From Amoeboaphelidium protococcarum X5 (Eukaryota > Fungi > Aphelidiomycota): DNA of 64,000 nt. Positions within the stretch are counted from its first letter, which is position 1, and every line of letters begins with the position of its first letter. The stretch covers positions 1,797 through 65,796 of the forward strand of contig JALDTO010000150.1 in NCBI GenBank assembly GCA_023515725.1, given 5' to 3'. The notes beneath the pieces were generated by a model. The model was not told where the DNA came from and ran no database searches. It worked only from the letters and a program-made list of their open reading frames with translations. The position numbers were made by a program, and so were the translations under genes. Shown piece by piece: positions 3,175-62,156 of this stretch.

Positions 3175-3752
3175 ATGCTTAATATTACTAAACTACGTTC
3201 AACTTTGACTCTCCGCAATCGCGATTATGGTCGCTTCATGTGTAAGTTAACCATCTGATCATTAGACTTCAGCTGTCATATATTTTTTAATGTAGCAAGT
3301 GTTAAAAAGTTCACTCTCGAGCATGAGTGGATCAGCGTGGACAAGAGCGAAAAGATTGGAACTATTGGCATCACTGATTACGCGCAGAAGGCACTTGGAG
3401 ATGTTGTGTTTGTTGAAGTTCCACCTGTCGGAAAGCAGCTAGAGTAGAAGAACGTCCTGGGAGCGGTCGAGTCTGTGAAGGCAGCCAGCGACATTTACAC
3501 TCCAGTCTCTGGCAAGGTGGTGGAAAGCAATACAGAGCTAGAGTCATCGCCGTCCATGATCAACAGCGATCCTGAAGGTGAAGGTACGTTTCTAACCGGG
3601 GGCATAGTTAGTGAAAACTTTTGTAAATTGTCCTATTTCCTGTAAAGTGTGTAGGTTGGATGGCAAAGGTGGAGTTGAGTGATCCATCGTAGCTTGATCA
3701 GTTGTTGGACGCGGCGGCGTACAAACAACATTGTGAGAGCTCTGAAGATTGA
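3175..3752 (+). CDS. GCSH: Glycine cleavage system H protein, mitochondrial; introns 3242-3295 and 3584-3654
   Basis: HEWI...[22 protein letters not shown], lipoyl-Lys motif [27 protein letters not shown]; Arg-rich presequence. Confidence 0.95.
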
Positions 3753-3797
3753 AAGCGTTATAAGTGGATAAGATAATGAATAAATATACATTATTGT

Positions 3798-6700
3798 TCA
3801 TGTAAACATTTGTATGGCATTCTTGAGAGAAATTGCTTTTAGTTCTTTTAGTACTTTCAGCTAAGATTGAGGATACATGACTTGAGACTGATCCATTAGA
3901 GTCTAATAGGCATACATGGCTTCATTCAAATTGTAAGCAGAGTAATCAGCAGTGTGGCTGGAGATCAACTTTGCGATTATTTTCTCTTTTGTATCGTAAT
4001 CCTTATACCTTGGTTCATTTACAAGCTGTAGTGCCAGACGAGAACTCAATAATTGCAATTCTGCATCCCCTTTCAACGTCATTTATAACAGTGTTTCCAC
4101 TTCTAATGATGCAGACTCAAAATCTTTTATTTACACATTATACCAACCTGTGAGTATCAACTTGATCAGCTATATTCTCTACTTGTCAAAAGGGAGAGCA
4201 ATCACACGATTAATCAAATCATCAATGACACTGAGCCATTCATACGCCAAATGGCCGCTACGCTCATTAATATTAGCTCCGCACTTGAACAAAATCTCGT
4301 CCACTACTCTCTAAACTTCAAGTGAATACTATCCAAACTCAAATGCGTATGGTTACTTTGACTTGTTAATTGTAGATAGCTTTTAAAATAAAGACTTGGC
4401 AGCTTTCACATCTTTGCAGCAGATATTCGATAGATGATCTACTAAATACTCAATTCCATCTTTATCAAATTAGAGCTGACTCAAATGTCGCTGCAGATCA
4501 TTCACAAGCAAGTCAGCATAGTACAAAGTTTAAAGACGCACTTTTCCACGTTCTAGCATAGTTAATATTTAGTCTTTCAGTGACAACTTATAAAACTTGT
4601 CCAGTTACAAAAACAGATTCTTATCAGGCAATTCAAACACATCCACGTCTTTAAACTCTACAAGCTTCATATCATAGAGATAATCACCTATTAATCTCAA
4701 ATCTCGATTCTACTCTCCACAAAATTCCAAAGCGATGCTTGTACAATTAGTCACAAAGTCCATAAGCAGACTTCTCTTTTAACAATTCTAAATGATTAAT
4801 TCTTCTAAATTATTACCATCAGACTACACATTATCTACATTGAAATGTTTCTAAAGTTACAATTACTACTTAATCTAATCATATTCAACCCAATCTTTAT
4901 CACGAAAGTTTAGAGGAGCATCCCGGTACGCATAAACTAGAAGCTGAGAAGAGTCTAAACTGCTAACTTCTGGCAGGTGATCGACAATAGATAGCAAATC
5001 ATCAACAGAGATATCACTTTTATGTCTGGTCAACAGTACGCAAATCGATTCTATCATCTAACGCTCAGCCATCCAACGAGCTATACTTTACAGTGATAAT
5101 TGATTCCATTCAGCATACAACTGAGGGAATGTATAATCGGACATAACCAGCTTAAATTCGGGCAATCTCAATAGACATTCCAAAGTTTACAATTTATCTA
5201 AACGGCGCAAAAGACAAAATCTTTACTAGCAGAATGTCAATAGTCTAAGCTCATTATCAGATTAATCTCTAATCAGAACAACTTTATCTAGTCGTGATTA
5301 TAAGTCTGTATCACCATCAGAAGAGCAGAGTTCATCCAACACATTGGTAAGGCTAATTCCATAATTGTATAGATATAATTAAGATTCTACATTGTGACAG
5401 ACTGTAGATATACATTGTTAAATCTACCAATGAACATCTAGAATTCTATGCAACACTCTCTTGATCAATTCAACGTCTATAATACGAGTATTCATCCACT
5501 AATGTTTAAACACTAAATCATAGCTCAGACCGTATTACTTAGTTATACTCAGAGCCTCCTCATACTGACCGAGTTATAATTTACTTTGCACAATATTCAA
5601 CGGCGTAGTCTCGGTAATTGAAGTCAGTTTAAAATGACGACTCTCAACACTGACTATACGTTCAGGAAGTTGAGTGTCAAATATCTTGAATCCAGTGACA
5701 AGGTTCAGAATCTATGCCAGTGGATAAAGCAATTACTAAGCCAGAAAACTTTCATTTCGCCTCTTTTCAACTACAAAAATTCTAATAAAATACTATAAAA
5801 AAGTTATATATGGTTAATGACTAAAAATCTCACCTTTCATACTAGGTAGATATTGAGTAAGATTAACACTGAAAAAAGTGTGTTAAAGTTAGCCAGAAGA
5901 AATGTGCTAGAAGAACAGGAAAGGCGCGCGAGATATCTATACGCGTTTCATCGAAGGCAATAACGCGTGAGTAAGATAAGGAAGGACGAACAAGATATAA
6001 AAACATGCTGATACTACTATGTTAATGAGTATCATTACTCCAACTTTGGTTTTGATGCAGATTTTGAGAGACCACCTACAATGTTGCCTTATGAGTCAGT
6101 CTTTACCTTGTGAACTATGAAACTCATTTCAAGCACTAGCATCTCTGACCGCGACGCGTCATTATGATCTTCGTTATTCACCACGTCGATCATTTAATGT
6201 GAGGTAAATCTAAACTATTCCACAACTTCAAACGGATCGCCAGATTCTTCCAATCTCAACACGACAACATGGCCACTTTTAAACTGTAAAAGTATCTTCT
6301 GCTTGCTATACCACCTAGCATTGATGATACAACTGTCAACTTTACATAGGCTTTGCACTTCGTCAAGTTTAATACATTGCAATAAGGCATCATCTAGCTA
6401 TTCATGCTTCAAACTGGTATTATAAACTTGCAGACTTCCATCAGCAGAGAGTGTAAGTAGATATGAATTACAATTATTATAATCGACACTGACTACACAA
6501 CTAGCATCACCAATACCTTGGTCATTCGTCCTTAATTTAAACAAAGATGTAAAATTGAGTGACTGAAGCCATGAACCTCTCAACTACGTATCATCTTCAT
6601 CATCATTAACTTTGTACAATGGCTGTAAGAATGGCTCTATCATAAGAGGTTTGAACACTTGAATATGATCTCTATAGTTAGTTCCAGCTACAGCAATCAA

Positions 6701-11102: not shown

Positions 11103-12239
<1,137 letters not shown>

Positions 12240-16761: not shown

Positions 16762-16773
16762 TCACATGTAAAC

Positions 16774-20372: not shown

Positions 20373-20851
20373 ATGGTTAAGATGCAACAGATGTAGCTAT
20401 TACTATTGACAATTGTGGCACTGATTAGCCTAGTAGATGCAACCAAATGTATGGATTCTACAGTATACACTATATCTTGAGCGATGATTTGACTAATATT
20501 CATTGTAATGTAGATGCGTACTTGGTGCTAAAGTCTCCATGGTCATTCGAAGCGTATGAATTGGTGGACGCGGAGAGGAAAAGCATTTTGACAGAATTTC
20601 GTGAATTGTGCCCACAATAGTATAATGTGCTGATTAATGACGTGTTTCCCGCTTGTAAGTATGTGTGGTTGTAAGAGTCTTCGCGTCGAGTCTTTGCCAA
20701 TAGAGATTCTGAGCTGGACTGGTGTTTGAATGCTGTTTAGAGAAGTTCGTTCACTGTCGCTTCACCTAATCCGTTTAATCACAGATGGACGTTCAAGATG
20801 GACATGGAACAATGTGGATAGACATTATCATTATTCTTCATGACTGACTGA
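20373..20851 (+). CDS. Small secreted hypothetical protein with 4 Cys; one intron ~20449-20513
   Basis: Signal peptide QLLLLTIVALISLVDA; a GTATGG...ACTAAT...TGTAG intron restores the frame to TGA 20851. Confidence 0.6.
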
Positions 20852-20903: not shown

Positions 20904-21621
20904 TCATTTCACTTTCTTGTTCTAACGCGGCGATTGTCTGGTGCCATTAGAGTAAACTTTGGGTGATTTACCACCATCTCTCTACGCGTAAATCATAGCA
21001 GTAAATGGCTCTTCAAAGGATAGAGCAACTTTGTACAAAAAGAACACAAACACTGATAACCAGATTCCAGTAACTTTCTAATACCAGAGAGCAGTGCCTA
21101 GAAAGACCAAAGTTGAACCATTATACATTGGATTATTCATCACATTGAACGGGAACGCTGTTACTCTATGAGACATCAAAATTCCAAAATAATCACCCAA
21201 ATAAGTTCCGGTTATGCCCAGCTAATACATTGACGACAATACAAACACGTTACCAATGGCAATAAGGACCGCTCCAACTAAAGGTGCGTGTTCAAACTAC
21301 ATCAAGTATCTGTCGCTGTGCATAGACTCCAGCGCCAACTTGTACAGATAATCACGCCATATGCCGGCGACAAATATACAAAACGCTAGTATGTAGCAAC
21401 CTCTACAAATTGAAAATGATTTTTAAGTTTAATTCGCACAACAACTTACCTGTACTTGTCACCGACACATTTACTGAGCCAATGCGTTCTGTACTCAGAT
21501 CTACACACACAGCACGTATATTATAGTCAATAGTGGCATGCATTCCATACCTGGCAGCTATATTCCATAGCAATGGATTCATTATGGCCTACGCGACAAA
21601 AGCGAAAACATAAACGTTCAT
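20904..21621 (-). CDS. OPI3: Phospholipid N-methyltransferase (Opi3/PEMT); introns 21403-21449 and 21501-21550
   Basis: [55 protein letters not shown]. Confidence 0.92.
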
Positions 21622-25043: not shown

Positions 25044-25126
25044 CGTCGACAGCAGGATTTGAACCTGCGCGCCCAGAGGGCAGTTGATTTCGAGTCAACC
25101 CCATTGGACCACTTTGGTATGTCGAC
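25044..25126 (-). tRNA. tRNA-Ser (CGA)
   Basis: GTCGACA/TGTCGAC acceptor, GTTGA-CT-CGA-AA-TCAAC, long variable arm GCCC-TCT-GGGC, G73, T7 terminator. Confidence 0.95.
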
Positions 25127-27021
25127 CTAAAATCGGCAAAATGTTGCGAAGGCGCATTATTTAAAGTAGTTTGGAAGAAATCTAGCGTGTTAAGATTTAA
25201 ATGTTCATGGGTATGGTAACAAAACTTGGTCCATTCAGTAATTTTGCTTCAATGCTTTTTAACACAAGGCATCGCCTGAATCGAACCTTTAAAACAGAAA
25301 GCTGCAGTCCTGGTTAAGGAAAATATTCTGAGTGATTGCTTTGTTTACGGTCTTATTTTAAGCGCACGCCGATGGGGTAGTTCTGTTTGCTAATGTCGAC
25401 TATCTTAGGTGCCCAATCCTCGTTGGCACAAGAGCATAAGCCGCTGCAATAGAAGAATTTTATGAACGGAGGCTGAAAATTTGTTTTTGCTGGCTTTTTA
25501 TGCAAGATAGCTCATCTGCAAATTTATTAAACCAAGGAAACAGCCCTGTCATAAGTCCTAATTATCTTGTGTCACAATCAGTTATGATTCACTTAAATTA
25601 AGGTTAATATGAGGGATAGATTGGTTAAGTTTTTTAGAAAGGAGCTTGGTCTGATTAATGCTGCTAAATTTTTACAGTGGGATGCGCTATTTGAGTTTCG
25701 GATGGATCGGCTGAATACGAAATCTCCAGTTAAATTGACTGCTGCATCAATTGAATAATTCTTAAAACCGTAGAAGCATTCAGTATTTGCCGACTCTGTC
25801 TAAGAATAAACAATGTTTACCGTGCAGCATACTAAAAGATTATTGACATTGGTATAGGAAGGATTTTTGAAGATGTATCTGAGCGCAATGAAGCCACAGC
25901 TCGATTCTTTTGCTTCCTCCATGTCCCGTGGCAGACCATCGATGATTTGATTTTGAGTGATTGTAAGTCGTGGCTTGGTTCTAATTTCTGCGCATGATGA
26001 GATTCCTTCAACTCTATTTCCGCCAGAATTAGTTACCAATGTTCGATATAGTGCTTGAGTATTAACTGGCACCAGATAGTAGCAAAAACGTCTTAGATTT
26101 TTGGTGGTACTAAAATGGAGTGATATGCGTAAATTCAAATTTAAGTTCAACTTTAGTGATATAATTAAGGGCGACCATACATGGCGAAGAGGCTGATATT
26201 TTTTATGATTATGAGGAGGATTTGCAGTTGTAAGTCTAGGAGGAGAAAGAACATTAATACGCGCACGTGAGCTGTTCAGTATATGAAGTAGAAACGTTTT
26301 GGTTGTGTTTGATTTCTATAAGATTGCTCATCTGTACCATCTTGAAAAAAATGCTCAATGAATACGCGCTACGAGTATTAAGTTGAGAGCCATCCTTGTG
26401 AAGCAGCTACAAGTCCTCCTTTTAAGGATCAGTTAATACGTTTACCGAGAGTCGGATTGATAACTATTGACAAGAAAGTTGAAAACTCTAAAATGGTATA
26501 TACTCTATGATTACAGTACTATGTTCAACATATTATTTTTATGCATATTTAACCTGCAGTTAACGGAAAAGCTCTACGTTTATGAGCATGAGCTAACACG
26601 GATACTGCGTTAAATGATCATTTGGAGTATGCGTGTTTCAAGTCAAAGTGGCTCTGTAATCTGTAAGAGTTGAACGAATCAAGAAATTACTACTTGTAAT
26701 AATGATGGTTGTAGCATAGGGAACATGTGTTTTTCATTCAGTCAGTCGGAATCTATAAAAAGTCCTCCCTCAGTTGACCTCATTAGTCAGTTGCAACGTG
26801 AAATGCCATCTACGAAAGTGGATGGCTCTTTGAGCATTTTACCGCTGCCAATCTCAATTAATGTATCTCTCATGCGCGACTTACGATGAATAGTCCATAA
26901 GAGTTAATACCAGTAAAAATCCTGACATACTTATTTGAGCTTGCTTTCTCGGAGTCTGTCTAAAGGTGTCATGCTCTTTTAAAAATGCCCCACTGAATAT
27001 GGTGAAAGGCGGGATGCGTAA

Positions 27022-30000
27022 ATGTTCGTGCGTCCAAGCTTGAAAATTTCATTAAGGAGGTTTTGTGGATACTTATATGAGCAACAATTTTTATTGCTTT
27101 ACACGATATTTCAGTTAATCAATGTAGCAAATAGTGCTTGCAACAAACGTGTGTTGGTTACTTTTGTTTCCATATTTGCTGTAAAAGGATTACTGTATTA
27201 ACATACCATATTGATTCTTCGGGGTAGTCAACATAATTATTCATCATACTTCTTATCTCCTACCGCATTAGTAATCATCGTATCTGTTTAATAGTCGTCA
27301 CACCGAGTTTACTAGTATTCATTTGTGATGTCGTCAACTATCAGCTCTTCAAACAACTAGTATTTGGTTAACAGTGGGGCCACCTACTGCTACTCTGTGG
27401 TGGCGCGTGTAAATGATAACACTGCTTATGCTGTGTGTTAGGCTAAAACAACACTTAATAGTATGATTTAGGTGCTGTCCAACGATGGCTCTATTGTGAG
27501 GTAGTTTACGTGGAAAGCAATCAGCTGGCTTCTGGCGTTTGCATGCCTTATAGTATTGCGTTGAATCAGTAAACTGGTGATATATACGTCACTGGTCAGG
27601 TGAAGAATAGTGTTGATGGTTATGTTTATGCATCGCGTTTACGTAACGATGGCTCTGTTGTCTGGACCTAAACATATGGTGCATCTGGATTGTAGAACAT
27701 TGGCTGGAATGTGCAGCTGTTTGCATCGAAAAATCTAATAACGGTGACTGGATAGTCTATGGGTGATCCTATGAGTTATTTTGGTGGCATGGATGGTCAA
27801 GTGATGTCTATTGATGCTTCGACAGGCGCTCTATTACATCGTATAGTCATTAGTCTTGGCAATGATGATTAGATACGATCATCAGTTAATCAGGATGATA
27901 TTAATCTTGTCGTTGCTGGTAATGTATGGCAGTCTTCTCAACGCAAGGGATATTTGGCGAGTTATGCTGTATCATCGTCTGGTAACTTGACTTTGAGATG
28001 AGAATAGACTCTCTTTACCAACATTTTAACCGAGTTTAGAACTGTAAAATATTACCGCGGTTCCTTATATGCCGGCGGAACTTGGAATGGTCATTTCTTT
28101 TCTGGTGGTACCTTCGCTTCGTCTATGAATTCAAATGGTTCTCTTGTGGTGAGATATGCGTTGAATGGCACAATGGATAATTCATTTTTTGCCTATGATT
28201 ATCAAGGTGACAGTAGAGTATACGATATCCATGTTGATCAGCCTTCCGATTTAGTTATGCAAGTCGGTACTTCTAGGCCTAATTAAGATAATAGTTGGTA
28301 TTCCATGGTGCGACAGAGCTACTTTTCTAAGTTAGGCTATTATTATGGTCTAAATGGGGTTTCAATTGGAGACAATTACGCGATGATATTCACATCGTTG
28401 GCAATGCTCGATGATCGTACAGTCATTGGTATAGGTGCAAGTAATCTGCTGCTCAATGGAAATGCTCACATTCTAGTTAATATGGATTTTACATTGATTA
28501 CTACCACTACTACGACGACCACCACTACTACTACTACTACTACCACTACTAGGACAACTACGACCACGACAAGTACTACTGCTACCACTACTAGGACAAC
28601 TACGACCACGACTAGTACTACTACTGCTTCCACAAGTACAGCTGCTATCACAAAGATGACCAGCACTACAATCGCACCATCACCGTCTACTACTGTTACA
28701 TCAGCAACGGTCACAAGCACTTCAGCTACTTCGATCACTCCAAATGCCACATCTATTGGTGCATCATTAATGGTATCTGTATCTACTGAATCATCTAATA
28801 CCTCGGCATTGATCACAATTTCATACTCAAGCACCATATCGAATGGATCATTCACATCTCTTTTTATGCCTTCTGCTAATAGTTCCTCTAGAGTGCCTTC
28901 ACTGGTTAGTTTGTCTAGTACAAGTACCATACTGTAGCCGATTGCTTTGTTAACGATTTCACAACTTGGTACTAGCCAATCATCTACTTATGGTAATGGA
29001 CATTAGTTTTCTTTGGGCTCTAGTCAGAATTAGGCCACTATATAAGGCGTTGCATAAACTACAACTGGTAACCCCGATTTGTAAGCTAATACAAATCAGT
29101 GTCTTAACATGGTTGGTGCGTACGCGTTAGTCGCCGTTTTGGCAGTTTTTGCTTTGATAGCTATTGGTATCACATACTTTGTGATGAAGAGGAGGATGCG
29201 CAAAATGAGTAGGAGGGGCAGAGGCTCTACTTTGAGGAATCATAGTGCTTTCTCCACCTTGACTAATAGCGTTACTCACACCGGAACCTACGCTGGTACA
29301 CATATGTAATAGACAACTCTCTAAGCATCTAATATTATTGCCATACCGGTGTTCATGCAAGCAAAGTATGGAGTAGATTTTACGACATCTCACCTGTTGA
29401 CTAAAGGTGGTGTGGGCTCTATTTACTTGGCTGAAGTTTTTAATTAATCACTTTAGTAGAGAATCCCAACTGGTGTAAAGCTATTATTCAAATAAATCGC
29501 TTAAAGTTTACGTGATATGTCTGATAATCAGCGTGCTATCTTCCATTAAGAATTGAGTATAATGTACCGATTCACAGATGATCCTAGACTTGCATATATT
29601 TACGCGTATAGTGAAGAGCCAGCCGGTCTCCTATTGCGATATTATGAATTGGGATCCATGAAGGATTACATTCACGGAGAGAGTTAGATGGCGTATTAGT
29701 TTATGTATACAACGTCGTAGGTACTGTATCTGATCAAAACTCTCTCCCAGGCGCTCTTTATAATGCACTCGAGCGGTTTTGTACATCTAGATATAAAGCC
29801 TGCTAATGTTTTGTTGGATTATGATGCACATAATGGGATGTTATTCTCGATCCTGACTGACTTTGGATTGTCCAAAATTGTGGATGAGTAGTCGCTTAAA
29901 GTCAAGGCGTTCTAAACTGGTAAGATTAAAGGTGCGTCTTTGAGTTATGCCGCACCTGAGATTTTGCTTTAATTTCGCAATGCTACTCCTTTAGGTTAAA

Positions 30001-30092
30001 TTGGCGCTGCATAGTATCCAGCTGATGTTTACTCTGTTGGAGTGGTATTGCTGGAGATGCTGAATCGACGTAAAGTTTGGGTTTGGGTTTGA
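27022..30092 (+). CDS. Receptor-like kinase: beta-propeller-like ectodomain, Thr/Ser stalk, TM, non-RD kinase; apparent frameshift at ~27505 and short C-terminus; start uncertain
   Basis: GDIYVTG and NDGSVVWTQTYG repeats; poly-Thr; TM AYALVAVLAVFALIAIGITYFVM-KRR; KGGVGSIY, HLDIKPANVLL, DFG, YAAPE. Confidence 0.75.
28500..28625 (+). repeat. (ACN)n coding repeat encoding a poly-Thr stalk
   Basis: actaccactactacgacg... with two copies of taccactactaggacaactacgaccacgac. Confidence 0.85.
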
Positions 30093-30721
30093 TGACTTGC
30101 TGTACTTCTAACGTTAACTATGATGCAATCTCATTCAACGGTTACATTACGATTTCAAGCGCTCTCGGCCACTTGTTGAAACGACGATTGCCTCTCCTGA
30201 GTGGGAAAATTCTAGGCTGTTCAATGATGAAGTTATGATCAAACAATAAATTTTTAGAGATGCAAAACACAATTATAATCTTAGTTCAGATATTACAGTA
30301 AGGTAGTACGATTAATAAAGGACATTAATACCAACGGGTGTTCACACTCAAAACTTTCATGGGATGCGGTACACGTTTAGCACGACCCGGGATAAGTTTC
30401 CTGCCCTCGAATACAGAGTCAATATTTCGAATCTTAGAGCGCACGGTCAAACTTCAAGGTTACTGTTTAAATGTTGCCCTTCCGACACGCCTTAACGGGT
30501 GACGAAAGTCGAAGCGTCTTGTCTAGCAAGGCATCGATTCCTGATCCTCACTGTATACGGTGAGTTTAACGGGATACTCCGGCCATTGTGCCGTTTAAAC
30601 ACGCCACTATAAGAGCTTTGGTATGACCTTGTAGTAGGTTCGCTCGTGGCCTTTTGGAAGTGATACTATTAGTTAATGAGTATATGATTAGTGCAGAGTC
30701 GGAATTTTAGCATTTTCCCGT

Positions 30722-30803
30722 GTCGACATATCAAAGTGGTTACTGAGATTGACTTGAAATCAATTGCCCTCCGGGCGCGCAGGTTCAAATCCTGCTGTCG
30801 ACG
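30722..30803 (+). tRNA. tRNA-Ser (TGA anticodon, reads UCA)
   Basis: GTCGACA/TGTCGAC acceptor, ATTGA-CT-TGA-AA-TCAAT, long variable arm, GGTTCAAATCC, G73. Confidence 0.95.
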
Positions 30804-31413
30804 ATCTTTATTACATTTTTGAATATAAGTAGTATCTTAACTCAGCTCGAATTTCTGTTCTACTAGAGCCATCTACTTCTTCATTAATTGAATAAAGTAT
30901 ACAGTGCAATCTCTCAAGAACTCTGCGATAATAACATTGAGAAAGGTAAAGTATAATCACTAAACTGTATTCAAACCATATAAATCACCAATCTCTGATT
31001 GCAACTTGATAAAAGATTAAATTCTATTCTATTCCGCTTGTTCATCGCGGGATACCACTATATTTATAGTCATTCCCTATTTCGTACCTTCAGGCAACAA
31101 TGTCACGGGATACTCAATCACAGTCAGACGATCTGGAGTCATTAGCAATGCAATCTACACGCACATGTCTCTTCAGATATAAACAACCAATTTATCTCTA
31201 TAAAATCAATCATACATTAGAATCAATTTTGCTGACGAGTAACGCTACCGGATCTTACGACATGATATCTCCAAAGAGTCAAAATTGTTGCAGAGTTGGG
31301 CCAGCGAAAAAAAAACGTTACAGAGCGGCTCTCTTTCAGTATCTCAAGACGACGCGCTATTAATTTCTTCAACTCTTTATCCAAAATTGCTAAGGTAATA
31401 AGAACATTTAAAT

Positions 31414-37060: not shown

Positions 37061-38501
37061 TCACTTCTTGCTTGCTGCAGCAATACGGCGATCTCTCTCC
37101 TCCAGGATGGTCAGCTTGACACCCTTCTGCTTTGGCAGAGACACCCAAGCCTTGTTACCCTTACCAATGACAAAGACGTTGCTCAGACGAGTGGCGAAGG
37201 TGTGATCCAACGCGTCCTTGATGTGGACAATATCGAAACCACCCAGATGTCTCTCACGGTGCACAATGACACCCATACGACCCATGTTACGACCGCCAGT
37301 GATGGCACACATGTTACCAGTGTCAAACTTGACAAAGTCGACAATCTTTCCAGTCTCCAGATCAACCTTCACAGTGTCATTAGCTTTGATCAATGGATCC
37401 GGGTAACGGATGGTGCGGCCATCATGAGTGACAACGTATGGAATACCTTTAGCTCCCAGCTGAACCTTTCTAACCTTGCACAGCTTGAACTTGGCCTCTT
37501 CATCAGTGATACGGTGGATAGTGAAGCGACCCTTGACATCATACACAAGACGGAAGTGCTCACCAGTCTTCTCAATGGAAATGACATCTACACACCCTGA
37601 TAAGAGATAAGAATATTATTAGCAATCTGCTGCAAAACAGTATCGAGATTGCAGATCGATAAATATATATGCTTATGCAGAGTCGTTCATTAAGATTCTA
37701 AAATACTTGGCCTCACCAATATAAATTTAGGCAAGAACGAGTACAGAATCAACATGTGGTATGAATACGGAATATAAACATACCTCCTAATAGCGGTACC
37801 AAACAGAAGTTGGTCATGGATTAATTGAATGAACGCGGGAGGACTACAATGACATTATGGCAAGTCAATGCGACGTCATCATCATCAATATAATGAGACG
37901 TTTTCTTGGTAACTCAATCTCTATAACGAGATGAACACCGCGACATTCAATTTAGGACTTGTTATGATGAGACTATCTAATCCCAACTGCATATCATTCC
38001 TGCTAGTCATATAAATACCTATATCTATATATGTATATAGTCAATCCAGAACGCGTGCATTTGCCACATGATTAATCAATTACGATAAATATCATGAGCC
38101 ATTCAATTAAAACAATGAGCCAAACTATCCATCATATAGTCACCAACGCATAGGAATATAAGCACGACATCAACAACAACATCAATCAATCAATCAATCT
38201 ACAATCATCGCTACTAATCAATAACAATTAAAATCCTACCCATATAACCAGCTGGGAAATTAGCATCAGTACGAACTTTCCCATCCACCTTAATCAGACG
38301 CTACTGCACAATAGAGACAACCTCGCGCTTGTTCAAAGCATACTTCAATCTGTTACGCAAGAAGATGATCAAAGGCAGACACTCACGCAATTTGTGAGGA
38401 CCAGACGATGGACGAGGTGCCCAGGTACCGGTCATTTTGTCCAGCATCCAGTGAGATGGAGCATTCAATCTTTTCAAGTGCTTTCTAGGTCCTCTTGGCA
38501 T
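37061..38501 (-). CDS. RPS4: 40S ribosomal protein S4 (eS4); one 652-nt intron 37588-38239
   Basis: [22 protein letters not shown]...FPAGYM|[22 protein letters not shown]...[12 protein letters not shown]...FATRLSNVF. Confidence 0.97.
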
Positions 38502-41924: not shown

Positions 41925-44900
41925 ATGGATGCATCAAGAAAAGGTAAGAAACTATAACACAATCTATAACATATCTGAAACTCTAGTCAATTGTAGTCTC
42001 AATGGATTCCAATTCAAGTTCGTCAAAGAAAGCAAGCAGAATTAGTGCTGATGCATTTGAAGCCTCTGCATTGACAAAGTTGATTTAGGATCTACATCAA
42101 GGCTAGCAGAGTGGAGAGTTGAAACGTACCACCAGTGTGAGGATGAATAGAAATACTTCTGCCGGATCATCAGTATCAGCATCTGGATAGTCCAATACAA
42201 ACAGTAGTAATTCTGCTCAAAATGGTTAATAAGCTACCGCGTAATCAGGAAATACTGCCCCTCAAGGATTAGCCCGCTCAGAGAGTATTCGAGTCGTTAA
42301 AATGACGCCGTCTAATAGCGCTGGATCACTCAAGCCTGATTTGAATGCGATTGCGGCATATCTGGCAGCTGGAGATGCACTGAATAGTGTTGGCGATTTG
42401 ACCAAGTAGTAATTGCAACTGAATCAACATCCTTCTCATTCATCTAATCTGAGTAAATCCGGAGGCTCATATACCAAAAGCGAATTATAGAGTGTTGATG
42501 AGTCTAAATAAGCTGATGAATCGACCATGCTTGCAGAAATAAGTAATATTGTGACATCGTAGAAAGTTATTGAAGAGAGAATTGTGGAGCCATCTGCCAA
42601 GTCGCCGGTAGCTGTTGAAGTTGTAACACAGGATGAGATGTCTAAAATTGAGCCACAATAGACTAATATGACTTTTGATGAGTTGAACGCGATTCATACC
42701 AAGCTCGCTGATGAGATAGAAGTTAAGAAGGCGGAGTTGAAAGCGTTGGAGGCTACAGAGAAAAAGGTTGATGACTTCTCCAGCTCGGTGCGCAACAAGA
42801 AGCGTGTGTCTATTGCTTCGTTTCTATCTATCGGCGGTAAGAAGTAGGCTGCAGGCGATAATGATGCTAATGGTTATACTAGCGCGTCTGGAACTTAAAC
42901 ATAAGCGGTTAACGAAAAGTAATAGGAGTAGAAGCATGAAAGTGATTAAGCTGGTGGTCTGAAGAGAAGTAAATCCTTATTCGCTCGCACTTTTGGCAAT
43001 GGAAATAAAGCTACCTCTTCAGCTAATGCGTAGTAGGCGCCATCTAATGCAGGAACCGATTCTTCTTAGACTGGTGGTAGTGGTGTCAAGATTATGAGAG
43101 GATTGAGTTTGCGTAAATCAAGACCTACGAGTCTGCTAGTACCAAATGGACAGTCTGCGGCTCATTAAAGAAATAAATCCATTTCTGATATTAACGAAAA
43201 TCTACCGTCCCCAATGGAAGAAGATGATGAGTAAAGTGTGAATGGAGCTAATAAATCATCTGGTGGTATTTTGAAGAAGATTTTGGGTGTAGGAGGTAGC
43301 AGCAGTAGTAAGAAGGATGATGGCCACAGATTTAAAATTGATCATTCCACTCATGACTCGTTTGCTCCTATTTATCATCCGCCCGCTAAAGTTGATAGTG
43401 AAAAAACTCAAGACTAAACTGAAGCTAAGGCTGCACCTTAGGCTGTTATTGCTTAGGTAGATGAAAGTGTACCGTTCTTGAATTTACCAGGGCCTCCACT
43501 ATCAGCTCCATCTTTGAATAACATTGCATAAGATAATTACACTCATCAGCCATAAGGTGAATAGTCTGAGAACCCTGCTGAAGATCTCTCTGTGGTATCA
43601 TCATCTAAGCTGGTTCGCAAATTGTCCAATTCTTCAAAGTCATCGCGCCGCAAGTTGTCTGGATCTGCTAATTTAGTTCTTGATAGTCAAGTTATACCTG
43701 AGAGCCTGGAGGAGGTGAATGCTAGTGAAGCTCATAAGAATAAAGAGTCCGTTAGTGCCAGCGGCAATGATTTGGAATAGTAGGTTGAAATTGTCGCTGC
43801 CTCTGTGAACATTTCAAATTCTGGTCTGAATGATGAAGAGTTAAAATCCACGTAAAGCACACGGAAAGATCAAGAAGTTTAGGCGAATGTTGTTATTGAC
43901 CAAGTATAGTAGTCTCTTGAGGCTGTTGCCAAGTCCAACTTGGTACGGGAGGAAAGTAAAGACGATGCATCAGATTTATTAGATACTTATGCATCTTTGA
44001 AGTCTAATCGTCATTCCACTGCTCAGCAGTTGTAATATCAAGTTGATGATTCTAAGATTGGTCAGATTGCTGAAAAGCGTAACGAATAGGCACCTGTAGA
44101 ATCCGATGCTCCTCCTCCTGCAATTGAAGAGAAGGCGAATGTGAATAATGGCCGATTGTTGATGAAAGACCTGTCTTTGATAGGGCATCAATTGGAGTCG
44201 GCTATAGCTATGGATAGTTCTGAGACTTCAAATTTAAAGTCACAGTTGGATGCAGAATTCTCAGCCGTAGGCGTCAAAGAGGAACCGGTAGTCCTGGTGA
44301 ATGGTGGAAATCAGGATTAGTAATTTAAAAGTCAGGCTATTCTTGAGAAGGGTCTCTCTGAAATATCAGCAGATTTACGGTTGGCTGCATCTGATTTGCC
44401 GGATCAGAAATTCACTGAAGAGCAAGAAGAATCTGTAAAGCCTGATAATGTCAGAACTTTGTAATCTCATGACTCGGACTCTGCAGGAGTTTTACAATAA
44501 CTAAGTAATCTAGTGAAGAGAAGTCAGGAGTTGACAGTCTCAAAATTTGGTGGTCAAGATGATGTCAATGCAGTGACAAGTGATGCATCTAAGACTTTGG
44601 AGTAAGATCAGGCAACTTATAGTGACCAGGATGATGAGAGTTTGGAAGATGCTGAACCGGTCTTAAATTCTGAAGAGGCCGATTTCTTGGCCAAAATAGG
44701 ATTTAAAGAGTTGACTGAAGTACTGGCAAAGTCTTCTTCCAGCACGGCGCTGAAGAGTAGCAATAGTCAAGTAATGATGGATAACAGTCAGCTGACGAGG
44801 AAAGTCAGCTCTCCTGTTGATCCGATTCCTGAAACTGCGGTACCTCTTCCAGCCGCTATAAGTAGCGCTGATGTATAAAAGGTGGACAGTCCTCCATAAT

Positions 44901-47858: not shown

Positions 47859-48262
47859 TCAGCGACGCATTTGTCTCTTCTAAATCACAACTGAGGACAT
47901 TATGAGAACGATCCACATTAACAACTACAATTATATCATAAATCTCAATTATATATTAAAATGCACTACTAATTATTTACGTATATAATGGTGAAATTAG
48001 GATGATAATCTGAGTTGAAGTTGTTACTAATGGAGCAAGATTTAAACAATTCAACAGTTGATCCATTCGATACACCATCAGTACCTGGAACTTATTCTAT
48101 GCATTATTACCGATAGCCAGTGTCTTTGCAAGGTGAGCTGTCAATCTACACTTAAAAGAAGTGGCAATACACACATACGTTATAAAAGTAAAATAAAAAA
48201 GTTACCTCAGCTTCAGGACATTGTTCGCACTTTGTGCAATTATAGTAGCCAGTAGCAGTCAT
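47859..48262 (-). CDS. JTB-like small Cys-rich membrane protein; two introns
   Basis: CTKCEQCPEAE|IDSSPCKDTGYRQQC...FKSC, TM FTIIY|LLMWIVLIMSSVVI, then QKRQMRR; both introns are GT...TGTAG and keep the frame. Confidence 0.6.
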
Positions 48263-51600: not shown

Positions 51601-53845
51601 AGGCTCTTCCAGCTGTTACTGAATCATAAGTGCATGAAGAGGAATCAGTGAAAACCGAAGTGTAGCCTGCTATAGAGGTCGAGTCTCCTGTTTAACAAGA
51701 GTAATATAAGAAGAATACTCGTGAAGTTGTTAGTGAACCCCCTCAGCCGGAGAAGCAAGCAAATCAGCAGCCTGAGCCGTAATTTGAACAATCTGCTGAT
51801 AATGTAGTCAGACAAAGTCTTGCACCAACACTTACTAATTAACGTGATAGTGTAAGTGTTTCCAAGAGTTTTTAGCAAGACGCTTTTATGTCTGATAGTC
51901 ATCTAGAGTCTCCTAATGCAACTCTTGTTGCTGAATAGACACAATCAATGAATTAAAATGATCACCAGGCTGTATAGGAGCAGGTGGAGCCTGCGTTTAA
52001 TGTCTAAGAAGCAAAGGTGAGTTAAATTGATGCAGATCAGGTTCGTTCAGTGGAGAATGTTGAGCAGTTACCTGCTGTAGGTGGATATTCTTCAAACGAA
52101 GTTTAGTAGGATGATGCCACTGACGCCAGTGAAGCTGTAGTCTAGAAAGCTTCTGTTGTTCCGCCGAGTAATGCTGTGGAAGAAGTTAAGAGCAAGGTGG
52201 AGAGAGAGCCTGCGATAAACTAACGTGCTTTCAAGACGTCGTTAGGTAATCTTCTTGGCCAACCACCAAAACCTCGACCGCAAGTGCAAAATGAGTCAGG
52301 TGATGAAACCGAGTCGATTAATGCAGACGCTAAAATGCAGTAGCCACTACAGCCACCAGAAGTACCTCCTAATGAATCTAAACCGGTGCCCGCTCCCAAG
52401 CCGGAAACTTAGGTGGAGTAAGTCAGAGAAGCTGATGTCAGTAAGGAAAAGGCGAGAAAGAGTTCTGGTGGTGCCAAGAAGTTTTTTGGCCTTTTTAAGA
52501 GTGGAAGCAGTTCTGATAACAAGGCGGAGGTTAAGAAGTAGGCGTCAGAAGTTAGCATCCAGTAGTAGAGTGTTGAACCTCGTCAAGTAGAGACTTAACC
52601 CCCAGCAACTCCTCGCAAGCCGGAATCAACTTCAGTTTAAGAATAGCAATAGTCTCCTTAAATTCCATCGCGTGCTTAAGTTTATGAGGTTGTGCCGGTG
52701 TAGAAGGAGGAGAAACCGAAAGAAGTTGCGGTAGAAGTATAATAGCCAGCGTAAGTAGAAGCACAGGCACCTGCCCCGGCTCCTAAAGCTCAAAAATTTG
52801 GCGTCAGATTACCGTTTGCTGGTGGAGATTTAGGTGCAATCGGTCAGGTAAAGTTGAAATCCTTCAGCGGTGGTTAACCAAAGACTGATAGTAAGGAGGA
52901 TTTGCGCGCCAATACATCTACTCCTGACAGTACGGTGGCAGCGCCTGATGTTCCATCCAAGTTTTTGAAACCTGGCACCCCATAAATGTAAGACCCCGTC
53001 CCGTAGAAGTAGCAATTGCCGTAATAATAGCCTTAGAGTCAAGTTTCTCAAGACTAGCCACCAGCTATTACTCAGTCAAAGCCTAAAATGCCAGCCGCTG
53101 GGTTTCCTGCGGCTCAGAGTTCATCTTAGGCAGCGCCTGCAGTCACTGCGCCTAAGCCGGGCGTTAAGATCACACCTAAAGATATGCCGTCTTCAGTTGA
53201 TTCTGGATCAAAGAAGTCTGATGGGAGTGCTTCTGCTGAATCACATGTAGCATCTTCCTAATCTAGTCCAGTAGTACCACAAATTCCTCAAAAGCAAGCT
53301 GTTGCAACTCCACCTAGCGCCGCCTCCACCTCGTAATCTGGTGCAGATAGTATCAAAACTATGCTCACAGACTCTGATTAAGGAAAGACTGAGTTTTTCA
53401 GTTGGATGAATGGTAAGTGTTAGCAGCAGTCTATAACAATGTCTTAGAAGTACGATAATTTGGATGATTATTTCAAAGATGGTTGCTCCATGTTGGAATT
53501 TATTGAGGTAAGTCTGATATAATTTTGCACGGTTTCATTAGAATTATATTTGAACTGTAGAAATTATCAAAGCAAAGCGTTGGAAATTATAAAAAGAATC
53601 CCAAGTTGATCCCTCACAAGATTGACAATATGAATATCCTGATCAGTTTTATGAAGGATAAGCTGGATCTCCCTCAGACTCAGAGTATTCTTGCAGAAGG
53701 TAACGTTAGTTTATCTGATCAATAATTTAATCTCAAATTGCGCTTATATTCTCGAAATTTGTGCGTTGTTTATGTAGAGCTTGTAAATGCTGAGCATAAG
53801 AAGGTGTTGCTATTCATGAGCATATTGAGCAAGAAGTATCCATGA
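48684..53845 (+). CDS. CARMIL-family LRR protein (PH-like region, linker, LRRs, CPI motif, Pro-rich region, WH2-like motif) with C-terminal calponin-homology domain; introns ~53508-53560 and ~53700-53777
   Basis: Linker GMMNTYVACCHHLNVPV; RI-like LRRs (LQYLNLSGNSLG); CPI-like LTHVAKDRVNLKNKRKP; WH2-like LGAIGQVKLKS; CH-like FFSWMN...LDDYFKDGCSMLEFIEKLS...KIDNMNILISFM. Confidence 0.8.
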
Positions 53846-56206: not shown

Positions 56207-56303
56207 TAGAGTGTTGCATGTATTATGTTACTACTTTGCACTATAGTGCAGATCAAGCTTACATTTTAAATCACGCACTTTACTATATTTCAATTATAAT
56301 CCT

Positions 56304-57139
56304 TCATAAATAATAAAATCCAATGGCAAATCCAGCACCGAAAACTCCACTCATTGGAATACTCTAGGCGTACTCTTTCAAGACTTGATATTATTGCACA
56401 GCGTAGTCGATCATTGGAAGAGCATTGCGTACTTGATCTACTCGTTCCCAATTCACTTTAATAAAGTCATAATCTATCAGAAACTACATAAATCTTTGCA
56501 CTAAATGTAAACAGCTAATAGGATACTAATAAATAATCTTACGTTGGATATAAACCATACGGCAGAGAATGTAGCAACGTAAGCGCCCAACTGCCTTCGA
56601 ATTAAACTGCCAGCGAATGCCCCACCACATCCAATAGTAAGAGGATAGTAGAGCTACTAACGCGTCTCAGGATTTCGCAACTATTCAGACCAGTGTCTGA
56701 CGTGATAATTTATGAATCTGAGTAGTTAAGTAGCCACTCGCGCCACCACATTACCCATAAAAGTGTAATCTTGTGAGAAGTTTGAGCTATCTGAGAGCGA
56801 GTCGTAGTCACTGTCAGCGAAATCATTATTATCATCCTGATCATCTCTCACAGCTGTATTACTTCGCTATTACTAAATTAATGATAGTATATTACCAGAG
56901 CTGAGACTTTCACTAATACTTCCTATGGATGTGATTCCCAATGTTTGTCTATTCAGATCACTTGAACTATTACCATCATTAAGATCGCTCTCATCCGGCG
57001 ACAAGCAGTATAAATATCTTAAACTTGATGCCTTGTGTTAAAGATGAAAGTAATAATATCCAATTATAGTATTAACTCCAAAGAGTATCCTTATAGATTT
57101 CGGTCTATATAATAATTGACTTTGCCTTGGTAGATTCAT
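56304..57139 (-). CDS. FUN14-domain mitochondrial outer-membrane protein; one intron
   Basis: LTIGCGGAFAGSLIRR...DFIKVNWERV...GVFGAGFAIGFYYL-stop. Confidence 0.65.
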
Positions 57140-57306: not shown

Positions 57307-59163
57307 TCACTATTTCCCGCTGGTAGCTTGTCGTCTACTAGTAGATCTTGTGGCAATCCGAGTTCTGGTGCTTCCTTATGAGGCCTTTTCTGGCTAAATT
57401 TTAGTCACGGTAGAAGATTATTACTCAACGTCCATGCTATTATTTATAAGCAATACGTTTCCACCTATAGCGCTGCGTGTATCTTTCATACTTTCTTAAG
57501 AGTCCTGATCGATAACATCATTCCAAAAAGTATCGCCACTAATAGACTGTTCCATGGCCAATTCAACCAGCTGAATAGCTTAAGAATCTGAAGCTGATTC
57601 ATTTAAGGCAGATTAGTAAAGATTGACAGCCAAATCTAACTCACCCATCACATGATAAACGTAGCCTAATAGTTCTTTCGTGTTAGAACTTGGCCAGAGA
57701 GACATAGACTTCTTTAACAATGCCAAAGCTTGATCAATCTGTCCAATTTGAACGCAGCAATATCCGAAATTTGTCAGATATGTTCCCATGAAAGAATCGC
57801 TGTAATTCTGATCAAGTACCACCTGGAGACACGACTGTAGATATCCATAAGCTTCATCAATTCGATCAGCATCTCTCAGGCAAAAAGACGCATATTGAAT
57901 GATGAGTTACAAATCATTGTCGCCGCGGCATCGTTCTAAGCACTGCTTATACAATGATGACGCTAACTGCGGATTTACCTCTTCATACTCACCAGCCATC
58001 AGTAGGAGAGGTACATGACTATCAGTACATTTCATAGCCTGACTGTACGCTATAATTGCAGCATCTGATTCTTTGTTCATTGAGAATGCATGACCAAGAC
58101 CAAGCCAGCCATCCACAAATTATGGATCAATAGACGTACAATGCGAAAAGTACCGCTTGCTCATTGCATACTTCATAGTTGACAAGTAGTACAACCCCAC
58201 AATGTACCAAGTGAGTGCAGACTCCGGATAATGAATGGCAAAGGAGGATCCAATCTCATACAATTTCACATTATCATTCAATTAGAATAGGCAATCGCCA
58301 TATAAATGGATTATACGCGGATCATACCTGTCACCATCATATAAGTCTTCCAGTATCGCAACAGCTTCCGGGTATCTACGCAGATGCATAAAATCCATTG
58401 CCTTTTTACATTTGTAATCAAGCTGATTGTGAACAATGTTAGTAATCTGGGTATCACCAGGATAATCTAGATCAAGTTTCTGAGAATACAAGCATTTTAC
58501 AGCGTCTGCGACCCACTTTTAGTCGAACTATACACTAAAATGTAGTGACTTTAAGAGTTTAGATGCCTCTTTAGAAGGAAGCGATCCAGAGGAAGATAAT
58601 TGCTACAACGCTTCCAAATTCGTTGGATCAATCTACAGACATTAGGTGTAATCAAGACGAGACTACTCCCAATTGCCAAGGCAACTATGGACTTGCGCTC
58701 TTATTTAATAACATTTGGCCAACATGGGAGTTGAGGACTATTTTTAATTACCAGCACTATTATTATTGTTATCAATGCAAATGTTGAGTATTGCCAAGGC
58801 TTCGTTCAATTGATCCAATTTGAGTAAGCACTGTGCTCTAACTAAAGCGAGCCCGCCAAGATCATCACCATCATTATTACAATTGGAGTTGAATTTATTA
58901 AGCATTTACAGCACTCTTTCATACTCTCCTCTAGCGACTAGAATAGCTGACAATTTAACCAAATCTGCAAAGTTCTGAGATAGACTATAGGAATATTAAG
59001 CCCAATGGAGTGCATTGTCTAGATCCAGAATCAGTAAAGCTTCATCTCTTTTATTTTGAAACTGCTCAAGGCAAGTCAGCGTCATCTGAGTGTCATTGAG
59101 TGGAATCTTTTACGATGACTACTGCCTTCTTCTAGTACCAGCTTCAGGAATATTAAACAACAT
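57307..59163 (-). CDS. CDC16: Anaphase-promoting complex TPR subunit Cdc16/APC6
   Basis: YPESALTWYIVGLYYL...RYFSHCTSIDPQFVDGWLGLGHAFSMNKESDAAIIAYSQA...SHVPLL; further TPRs. Confidence 0.82.
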
Positions 59164-59492
59164 ATTCAGAAATAATAGCAGTGGGTAAAAGCGGTATATA
59201 GATATATATACCTAGTCGTCGTACGAACCAATAATATGCAATGAGTAGAGAAAAGCAGAGAAGCTAATGAAGAGAGAAACGTTGAGAAATGCGGAGCTGA
59301 AACAGCGCGACAAGAAACAGTTTTTCGGGAGAGATGAGAAAAGGAGCAGCAAGACAATTCAAGCCGCTGTGAAATGTTGAAATTTTTAGCAAGCAGCACA
59401 CAATACAGGTCGAGATGCCTGAAATATTAATTGGCGCATTCATTTAATATCTCTGGTGCGAGCATATCCCGCACAACACACACACTATGAAG

Positions 59493-59967
59493 TCAGTCAA
59501 TAATCTCATTGCAATGCTCTTGTATTGACTTTAGTGACACGTAAATCTCCTGACAAAGGCTTTCAATCTATTTACAATGTTCTACTCTCAAGTCTAGTTA
59601 TTTCAAGAGGAGTCTACAGATATAGTTCTCAGAGAATATTCTTTCAAACTGGTAAATGGTGGCGCACTTACTTTAATTTTTATTGCTTATTTTATTCAGC
59701 ATTTTATTCCATCAATTTATACCACTCTTGAAATTTCTATATAGTTCCCAAATCTTTCAGTGCTGCTTTTGTATTTGTAATACCGAGTTTCTCGCTGTCT
59801 CCATCTGGCTAATTGGTAACTTTATCTTTTAGATCACTTTTAACATCCTATTCATTATTGTTCTTCTTCATGAGATCATTAAGCTTACTAAACACTTTGC
59901 GATCTTTATCGCTAAAGTCGATATTACCTTCCCACTCTTGCAGCAATTAACCAATGTCTGTGATCAT
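59493..59967 (-). CDS. Short protein resembling only the N-terminus of COG3/Sec34; one intron
   Basis: LLQEWEGNIDFSDKDRK...LGTIQKFQEWYKLMEQ...LDLRVEHCKQIESL; TGA after ~140 aa. Confidence 0.45.
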
Positions 59968-60140
59968 TTATAAGTGATCTCCGTTATGCAACGCTATTAT
60001 ATCTTTTCAATTGACGCGAGACGGAAAGAAATACTGCCGCAGTATGTCTCATCAAAGCTATGGAAATGAAGATTATGTGATGGTATGGTACTTTATTTAC
60101 TTCAATGTTACAAAATGTTAACTAAATGTGCACGTTATGG

Positions 60141-61308
60141 TCATGCCAGAGTATTTTTCTTTTTCTTATCAGCCAACTCAGCCAGAACCTTGGTGGCATT
60201 GGTGTGCAGAGTGTGATTTTGCATGCTCTAAAGTCTGTGACAGGTGGTGTTCATCCTTTATGCAGCCTAATCTCTCATGGATTCGAACCTCTTGACGATT
60301 GCAGTCTTGTTGGCACGGGTATAACAAAATGGCACTTGTACCAGTGTGCTAGCCAAAGACATACCTGATGTTCCAGCTCCAAAAGTACCCAGGCCAATAC
60401 CTATACCCGCGACTGCTGCAGCAACACCGGCAGTTCCAATTACGGTGAGGATAGACACACCGAGTGTTGCCAGTCCAGCCACCACTCCAAAACCTTCCAT
60501 GGATAATGTCAGAACTTCTTTTGTGCAATCGCGACCATTCTCAGTGCACAGCATTCCACATCTATACGGCTTTTGTGGTGGGCAATTCTCAGAACACACT
60601 ACAAACGTTCAAGTGAATTATGAACATCATATTTAAATAAGCCATGCATGAAAATTGGAACTTACAGTATCCGTGACGAGTGTAACCTTCAGGACATTTG
60701 TCATAACACAGCAGACCTTCGCGTTCTTGGGTGGTTTGATTGCAGGCTACACTATACCGAAAATGATCGCTTAAACTCGATGAGATATAGCATAACATTA
60801 CCTAATGGTTTTCCAAATCCTCTAAACTTTCCCTTCATAAAGCCAGTAGAGCAGAATGGACCGCGGCCAGTATGGTTAGTTGGACATGGCTTGTAGCAGA
60901 GGGCACTACACTTATCAAGAAATTGAAAGGATTTAAGTTGTGTCCAATATCATCACGCTTACCCTGAACGTTCACGCCCATTGACACATGTATTGGCAAA
61001 GTGTGGTTTCCCAATAGCAAAGTTTTGCAGCCAACACGCACTACACAGTTGAAACAACGATATATCATATAGTTCAGAATAGATAAAGAATAACAAGAAA
61101 CTTACGGCGAATCTTCGTAGTCACCAGATACAGCATCAATAGGAGTCGGCCTGGTAACATTTAGATTGCGCTCAAGCATTGTTGCATTCAGAGCAGTAGA
61201 ATTATAGTGTTTCAATCTTGAGGCACCATACTATCGCTGATACACCTAAGGGTCAGCTAGAGAGGTTAGTGCGACCAGGAATGTCAATATAGCAGCGCGA
61301 ACAAACAT
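60141..61308 (-). CDS. Secreted Cys-rich repeat protein with Gly/Ala-rich hydrophobic hairpin; four introns
   Basis: Signal peptide; repeats ERSGALCYKPCP and EREGLLCYDKCP; CPPQKPYRCGMLC; all four introns keep the frame. Confidence 0.75.
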
Positions 61309-61674
61309 GATACTTTAACTTTTGATTTAGACAAGATCGGTGATATGAGATAAATATTAAAAGGAAACAAGATGAATACATGAATTTGAGCTTTTATGCA
61401 CTTGCAGGTTTCCTATTTCGAAATTGAAGGAGGCTGATCACGCATAGATTTACTTGAAACATCAAAATTTCCTGATTTAGAACGTGTCTCTTTTGAAACG
61501 GGCCGATTGAATCAATATGGTTTCAACAAATATCTGATCTTTCCCATTCCAGATGCTTAGTCAAATATTTACATCATCATAAATTGAATACCATTCATAG
61601 AAATTAATTCATCATATCAGGTATTATTCATTATTTCACATTAAACTTTAAGCAACACCACAAAGGCTAGAGAT

Positions 61675-62156
61675 TCAAGCAATCTTACACGCAGCATCGG
61701 AGTCAACCTTTATGCCTTGGTCAGCCAATTTTGCCAGGGTAGCCTTACACTGCTCATATGCTTACTTTTGGTTTGATGTAACTACATCAGACGCGGCAAC
61801 TTAGTTCAACTAGTCTTGGGGAATCTGAGCAGGAAGATTCAAATCTTACACACTCGGTACTGTGGGAATACACTTGATGCAAGCGGACTTGTCAGAGCAT
61901 TTGCATTTGCTCGTGATCTTCCCATTGTGGTTAGAGTAATTCAGCTAGATGCAAGCTTTTGGATTCTTGCAAGTAAAGCTAATACCATTTTATGACATAG
62001 ATACATATTGAATACCACAATCTACAATGCGCAATGTTAGTTAGTCTATTTCTTGTGTGAGATTCTCAAGTACGACATACCTGGTAAAGTGGTTGGACGA
62101 GCGGAAATGTTGGCCGCGGTGGCCAGTATCAAAATCAAATAGTAGACAATATTCAT
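61675..62156 (-). CDS. Small secreted Cys-rich protein; intron 62022-62080
   Basis: Signal MNIVYYLILILATAANISA; 9 Cys in ~140 aa; GTATGT...CTAAC...TGTAG intron. Confidence 0.7.

What the first reader, a model, noticed from the sequence alone, without database searches (positions are those of the whole stretch)
3242..62080. All 20 modelled introns end in the same pentamer, TGTAG
Seen: every intron I could place ends ...TGTAG. The count is GCSH x2, NBAS, sirtuin, 20373 gene, OPI3 x2, RPS4, 41925 gene, JTB-like x2, CARMIL x2, FUN14, COG3-like, 60141 gene x4 and 62156 gene. Many boundaries are fixed independently by protein homology. In NBAS an upstream TATAG is skipped in favour of TGTAG. Branch points (CTAAC/CTAAT) are inconsistent and pyrimidine tracts are weak. 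Established: most eukaryotic acceptors are YAG with a weakly constrained -4 position; extended acceptors are known in nematodes (TTTCAG) and as a bias in plants (TGYAG). Inference: this lineage defines 3' splice sites by an extended, near-invariant motif, possibly via altered U2AF, which could help when TAG and CAG Gln codons create many exonic YAG decoys.
Basis: partly seen in the sequence, partly recalled or inferred. Interest (0 to 1): 0.85.

Follow-up and report, generated by a model that had tools for sequence, protein, structure and literature searches.

The report
Aphelid introns ending in TGTAG
In the alga-parasitic fungal relative Amoeboaphelidium protococcarum most introns end in the five letters TGTAG instead of the usual loose pyrimidine-AG, a nematode-like extended splice signal that is already the commonest ending in a relative with the standard genetic code, so the organism's altered code did not create it.

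Summary
Real, with two corrections. The genome is Amoeboaphelidium protococcarum (TAA/TAG = Gln). A gene finder blind to the acceptor chose TGTAG in 36/72 calls (chance 1.5%). Homology alone ranked TGTAG first at 7/7 informative junctions. Genome-wide, GTAAGT...TGTAG occurs 1194 times against 333 for TGCAG (chance level).

Correction 1: it is near-invariant, not invariant. About 24 of 29-31 intron-like sites in an acceptor-blind genome sample end TGTAG; the rest look like one-letter variants, and one homeolog ends GGTAG.

Correction 2: the genetic code is not the origin. A standard-code environmental aphelid has 16/30 TGTAG; A. occidentale 1/17.

No branch-point or pyrimidine signal was found. 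U2 snRNA, SF1 and the Prp8 alpha-finger are conventional; U2AF2 RRM1 is diverged and U2AF1 carries S34A. Best reading: a nematode-like acceptor read by U2AF (inferred). UGUAG is also the optimal PUS7 motif (speculative lead). No RNA run was listed, so no junction was seen directly. The scan noted this before in many other windows of this genome. No description was found in the held papers; the genome paper was not available.

The parts
3242..3295 (+). GCSH intron 1 (54 nt, GTAAGT...TGTAG); homeolog ends GGTAG
3584..3654 (+). GCSH intron 2 (71 nt, GTACGT...TGTAG)
5771..5833 (-). NBAS-like gene intron (63 nt); upstream TATAG and ATTAG are out of frame
11511..11582 (+). sirtuin intron (72 nt)
20449..20513 (+). 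intron of gene at 20373 (donor position uncertain, acceptor TGTAG)
21403..21449 (-). OPI3-like intron 2 (47 nt)
21501..21550 (-). OPI3-like intron 1 (50 nt)
31155..31215 (-).
37588..38239 (-). RPS4 intron (652 nt); in-frame ATCAG 9 nt upstream is skipped; holds a 60-nt cassette 37784-37843 flanked by TGTAG and GTATGT
41944..41996 (+). intron of gene at 41925 (53 nt)
47925..47980 (-). JTB-like intron 2 (56 nt)
48146..48205 (-). JTB-like intron 1 (60 nt)
53508..53560 (+). CARMIL/CH gene intron 1 (53 nt)
53700..53777 (+). CARMIL/CH gene intron 2 (78 nt)
56484..56542 (-). FUN14-like intron (59 nt)
60599..60665 (-). 60141 gene intron 4 (67 nt)
60747..60801 (-). 60141 gene intron 3 (55 nt); TATAG 5 nt upstream skipped
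60906..60962 (-). 60141 gene intron 2 (57 nt)
61041..61105 (-). 60141 gene intron 1 (65 nt)
62022..62080 (-). 62156 gene intron (59 nt)

Best explanation
These are ordinary GT-AG U2-type introns, mostly 47-78 nt and about 71% A+T, whose 3' end is marked by an extended acceptor W-N-T-G-T-A-G instead of a branch-point consensus plus pyrimidine tract. Shown: the motif, its excess, its conservation, the lack of branch-point and pyrimidine signal, and a gradient across aphelids (A. occidentale 1/17, environmental standard-code aphelid 16/30, A. protococcarum about 80-95%). Inferred: as in C. elegans (UUUCAG/R), the U2AF heterodimer reads the whole pentamer early, U2AF1 zinc fingers on UAG and a remodelled U2AF2 on the UG just upstream; U2 then settles on a nearby degenerate adenosine, and the pair donor + short AT-rich spacer + TGTAG defines the intron. 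TGTAG alone is not sufficient, as it is common in exons.
For: Motif. Selection: positions -5..-3 98% identical between homeologs vs 80% at -25..-6, p=4e-5 (partly biased because the window copy was chosen as TGTAG). YAG decoys within 30 nt upstream are skipped in 12/39 introns, so it is not first-AG scanning. No branch point although U2 keeps GUAGUA and SF1 keeps its KH GPRG loop, the same picture as C. elegans (PMC11347140). U2AF2 matches TIGR01642 only over positions 281-510, its RRM1 half is not recognised against PDB, RRM2 has a 6-residue loop deletion. U2AF1 keeps the AG-reading residues but has Ala at Ser34, the residue that contacts -3U. Prp8 alpha-finger reads conventionally.
Against: No spliced read was seen. 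No binding data; divergence of U2AF2 could be general fast evolution, and I could not obtain U2AF sequences of A. occidentale or the environmental aphelid. S34A removes a contact to -3U rather than adding one, and 4 of 59 aligned homologues also show Ala there. U6, U5, U1, Prp18, Slu7 and Fyv6 were not examined or not found.
Confidence: 0.58

Rival explanations
1. The pentamer is enforced late, at exon ligation, by second-step factors (Prp8, Prp18, Slu7, Fyv6/FAM192A, Prp22 proofreading) rather than by U2AF.
For: Prp8 Q1594 contacts the -3 base and sets 3' splice site stringency with Prp18 and Fyv6 in yeast (bioRxiv 2025.06.16.659908).
Against: The Prp8 alpha-finger segment reads conventionally, as judged from recalled consensus; with no branch-point or pyrimidine signal something must mark the 3' end early. 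The other factors were not examined.
Confidence: 0.14
2. TAA/TAG-to-Gln reassignment created exonic YAG decoys and this selected the extended acceptor.
For: Exonic YAG 30/kb vs 20-24/kb in standard-code relatives; the motif is strictest in the recoded species (24/29 vs 16/30, p=0.025); mild depletion of TGTAG in coding sense strand, 113 vs 145+-10.
Against: TGTAG is already modal in a standard-code aphelid. Recoding doubles exonic TGTAG itself (0.96 vs 0.5/kb). GGTAG and CGTAG are depleted similarly, and donor...TGTAG pairs in exons are not depleted. From my own knowledge, TAR=Gln ciliates have no such extended acceptor (not tested here).
Confidence: 0.1
3. UGUAG is kept because it is the optimal Pus7 substrate: pseudouridine at -3 of the nascent pre-mRNA marks true acceptors for U2AF1 or another reader.
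For: UGUAG is the optimal PUS7 motif in cells, PUS7 modifies pre-mRNA and affects splicing, and needs an unpaired target U (PMC13689517); the introns are AT-rich; most relatives' acceptors are UNUAG too; the changed U2AF1 residue 34 faces -3.
Against: Post-hoc match (1 of 32 NNYAG pentamers); likely TGCAG, CGTAG, GGTAG acceptors fall outside UNUAR; no modification data; the Pus7 gene was not looked up.
Confidence: 0.07
4. The shared end is a footprint of a transposon-like intron generator (introner), not a recognition requirement.
For: Intron positions differ among aphelids (RPS4 intron after codon 1 in relatives, at codon 88 here).
Against: Interiors show no shared sequence by eye and donors vary; the end is held while interiors drift.
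Confidence: 0.04
5. Artefact: introns were modelled by looking for TGTAG.
For: No RNA junctions; curated set is circular by construction.
Against: Four acceptor-blind tests and genome counts.
Confidence: 0.02

Closest known systems
C. elegans / nematode UUUCAG/R 3' splice site
   Same: Short AT-rich introns, extended near-invariant acceptor, no branch-point consensus, yet SF1 and the U2 branch-recognition sequence are retained (PMC11347140).
   Different: Different sequence: purine G at -4 and T at -3, so it is not a mini pyrimidine tract; independent origin in a fungal sister group; U2AF binding untested here.
Fused branch point-acceptor ends (Trichomonas, Giardia, Yarrowia)
   Same: Conserved bases upstream of the terminal AG (PMC2483917).
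   Different: Those anchor ACTAAC at a fixed distance in intron-poor genomes; here there is no branch-point motif and thousands of introns.
Ostreococcus lucimarinus CGCAG preference and plant TGYAG bias
   Same: Purine at -4 (for Ostreococcus; plant bias from own knowledge and examples).
   Different: Those are weaker preferences with C at -3 common; here TGCAG is at chance level genome-wide.
Amoeboaphelidium occidentale introns
   Same: Same genus, GT-AG, strong T at -3.
   Different: 31-45 nt, mostly TTTAG/CTTAG, 1 of 17 TGTAG, standard code.

Membership tests
U2-type spliceosomal introns | GT...AG ends with GTRAGT-like donor | tested here: met
   39/39 GT, +3A 38/39, +5G 32/39
U2-type spliceosomal introns | Major spliceosome parts present (U2 snRNA, U2AF1, U2AF2, SF1, Prp8) | tested here: met
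   U6 not found, inconclusive
U2-type spliceosomal introns | Removal from mRNA seen in reads | not testable with these tools
   no RNA run was listed
Nematode-type extended acceptor | Near-invariant bases upstream of YAG | tested here: met
Nematode-type extended acceptor | No branch-point consensus | tested here: met
   CTAAC 2/39 vs 1.0; CTRAY 8 vs 5.7, p=0.2
Nematode-type extended acceptor | Sequence UUUCAG/R (short U tract) | tested here: not met
   TGTAG, no +1 purine rule
Nematode-type extended acceptor | Direct recognition by both U2AF subunits | not testable with these tools
   only sequence divergence seen
Fused branch point-AG introns (Giardia/Trichomonas/Yarrowia type) | ACTAAC at fixed distance from AG | tested here: not met
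U12-type introns | GTATCC/ATATCC donor and TCCTTAAC branch site | tested here: not met
   donor and upstream columns
Introner elements | Families of similar intron sequences | tested here: inconclusive
   no similarity by eye; no formal all-against-all test

The most novel reading that the evidence does not exclude
The acceptor is defined through an RNA modification: UGUAG is the optimal Pus7 site, and pseudouridine at -3, read by an altered U2AF1 (Ala34) or another factor, distinguishes real 3' splice sites genome-wide.
Probability: 0.07. Interest if true: 0.92.

Novelty: new variant of a known kind. Interest (0 to 1): 0.6.

Why it matters
The 3' splice site of most eukaryotes is only YAG, and a 50-species survey listed five exceptions (PMC2483917). 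This adds a branch-point-free extended acceptor with a purine at -4 in the sister group of fungi. The aphelids also supply a natural series (about 6%, 53%, 80-95% TGTAG) in which the change in splicing factors can be mapped against the change in signal. That makes testable how U2AF specificity evolves, including at residue 34 of U2AF1, the cancer hotspot. It also gives a practical rule for annotating aphelid genomes.

Tried and rejected
RNA evidence: the look-up of sequencing runs listed none. Genome paper (Mikhailov 2022, Curr Biol) not held; six searches on aphelid splicing, TGTAG or UGUAG acceptors found no description. Intramolecular pairing of TGTAG with a CTAACA branch site: rejected, CTAAC not enriched. 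Donor-acceptor complementarity: rejected by inspection. Altered U2 branch-recognition region: rejected. Loss of U2AF1: suspected after a zf-CCCH search missed it, rejected by motif search. U6 search empty and uninformative. Search for relatives' U2AF2 failed. GCSH homologues fetched were too short to rank acceptors, RPP21 ranking ambiguous. Apparent non-TGTAG intron at window 62660-62732 rejected: donor not kept in the homeolog. JGI metagenome scan gave no further usable aphelid locus that I analysed. One coordinate slip (TAGAA row) is a typo for a TGTAG intron. Joined spliced models were built only inside scripts and compared with loci and proteins already fetched; none was sent to a database search, so Pfam or homologue searches of joined models were left out.
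Full report
Source. Long open frames appear only if TGA is the sole stop. The RPS4 exon matches MIR68_003553 of Amoeboaphelidium protococcarum at 100% on a contig of the same length as ours. UAR=Gln is published for this species (PMC5304391). The assembly (23.6 Mb) holds a second copy of almost the whole window on contig C212 at about 90% identity, which I used as an internal control.

Observation. A 21st, in a CHS5_N gene (31215-31155), does too. For three genes of the second strain X5, the annotated gene range and product length are compatible with the TGTAG introns. Because such a set can be circular, I ran acceptor-blind tests. A self-trained gene model allowing any AG called 72 introns in 270 kb (homeologous copies counted separately), 36 ending TGTAG against 1.5% expected; every other pentamer occurred 1-4 times, and the non-TGTAG calls I inspected lay in continuous ORFs, had a TGTAG nearby, had unconserved donors or sat in broken-looking regions. 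Letting the model learn the acceptor converged on T-G-T at -5..-3. Ranking donors without acceptor information, 16 of the top 20 were followed by TGTAG. Scoring every AG 35-130 nt after a donor by protein similarity to relatives, TGTAG came first at all 7 informative junctions, including RPS4 where an in-frame ATCAG lies 9 nt upstream. Genome-wide, GTAAGT N35-65 TGTAG occurs 1194 times and the TGCAG version 333 times, although TGCAG is the commoner word; chance is about 260-330 for TGTAG and 420 for TGCAG. The tool's own reversed-pattern control (996) is not a matched control, since its two words are common in coding DNA.

How strict. An acceptor-blind listing of all 66 AG|GTAAGTWW sites with 80 nt of downstream sequence, read by eye, gave about 24 ending TGTAG among 29-31 intron-like stretches (83%, 95% interval 64-94%). 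The likely exceptions are one-letter variants: CGTAG twice, TATAG once or twice, TGCAG once. These were not fetched and are unconfirmed. The intact homeolog of GCSH intron 1 ends GGTAG with no TGTAG available. Locally 39 of 39 curated loci have TGTAG, a biased figure. Positions -5..-3 are 98% identical between homeologs against 80% for -25..-6. So the rule is near-invariant, with -5 the most tolerant position.

Anatomy. Introns are 47-78 nt (two longer pieces in RPS4), 71% A+T, donor GTA(A/T)G(T). Position -7 is A/T, -6 is often G (GTGTGTAG ends are frequent). There is no branch-point excess (CTAAC 2/39 vs 1.0; CTRAY 8 vs 5.7) and no pyrimidine tract (55%). Upstream YAGs within 30 nt are skipped in 12 of 39. 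TGTAG is common in exons (0.96/kb), only mildly depleted (113 vs 145, like GGTAG and CGTAG), and donor...TGTAG pairs are not avoided, so the motif acts together with the donor and the short AT-rich spacer.

Relatives. A. occidentale (standard code): 17 introns inferred from annotated lengths and gene models are 31-45 nt (one of 127) and end mostly TTTAG/CTTAG, one TGTAG. A freshwater metagenome contig (ERZ19026002/ERZ19026233) is syntenic with both species, groups with aphelids in an RPS4 tree (97/89; A. protococcarum itself unresolved) and uses TAA and TAG as stops. Its introns are 55-100 nt; 16 of 30 end TGTAG (12-13 of 34 with a flat acceptor), with -5T 77%, -4G 70%, -3T 90%. In the conserved Mo25 and UBC13 genes read by eye, 4 of 6 end TGTAG. 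The preference therefore exists without the code change. The order of events is not fixed, because I could not place this organism relative to A. protococcarum.

Machinery. U2 keeps GUAGUA. SF1 is present, short, with its KH loop. Prp8's alpha-finger reads conventionally (role). U2AF1 (C141) keeps Phe20, Cys27, Arg28, His29 and the second-finger contacts for AG, lacks an RS tail, and has Ala34, Thr32, Asn22; Ser34 contacts -3U in the S. pombe structure (PMC7505975). U2AF2 (C214) keeps the U2AF1-binding Trp, RRM2 and UHM, but RRM1 is not recognised and RRM2 has a shortened loop. These changes fit a shift in what U2AF reads, but do not prove it.

Mechanism and comparison. The closest working model is C. 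elegans: invariant UUUCAG/R read by both U2AF subunits, no branch-point consensus, SF1 and U2 retained (PMC11347140). It works like that (inferred, 0.58) but is not that motif. A 50-species survey lists five exceptions to plain YAG, none like this (PMC2483917). A speculative lead: UGUAG is the optimal PUS7 motif and PUS7 acts on pre-mRNA (PMC13689517); 0.07.

Limits. No RNA run was listed. The genome paper could not be read, so prior mention there cannot be excluded. Joined spliced models were used only inside scripts against data already fetched and were not sent to database searches. Other readers of this scan reported the same motif in many windows of this genome; that is not independent evidence. 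Verdict: real, new variant of a known kind, interest 0.6.

Noticed in passing
window 37588-38239 (-), cassette 37784-37843: The 652-nt RPS4 intron is unusually conserved between homeologs and in strain X5 and holds a 60-nt in-frame cassette flanked by TGTAG and GTATGT; X5 annotation includes it (282 aa vs 262 aa). Possible autoregulatory exon of a ribosomal protein gene; no Rfam match.
   Followed up: partly
window 26180-30348: About 4 kb with a receptor-like kinase gene is absent from the homeolog, is bounded near two tRNA-Ser genes (25044-25126, 30721-30804), and has an in-frame TGA at 27999-28001.
   Followed up: partly
window 13-74 and 770-850: Short inverted and direct repeats (about 70 nt, CCTACCTAC/ACAATGTAG-rich) flank a region not aligned to the homeolog; possible ends of a mobile element.
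   Followed up: no
whole window vs G000:C212:338000-404000: Collinear second copy at about 90% identity, consistent with a hybrid or duplicated genome.
   Followed up: yes
L042, L044-L052 (ENA ERZ19026002, ERZ19026233): Unnamed standard-code aphelid in freshwater metagenomes, syntenic with Amoeboaphelidium, with weak +5G donors (GTATC/GTACA) and TGTAG as modal acceptor.
   Followed up: yes
L050 (Logan SRR32590478): Another standard-code aphelid-like contig (COG3, RPS4, PALP synteny); its RPS4 intron ends TTTAG and is long.
   Followed up: partly
L041 Mo25 gene (A. occidentale): One intron appears to end in AAG (TAAAG), a non-YAG acceptor.
   Followed up: no
   Followed up: no
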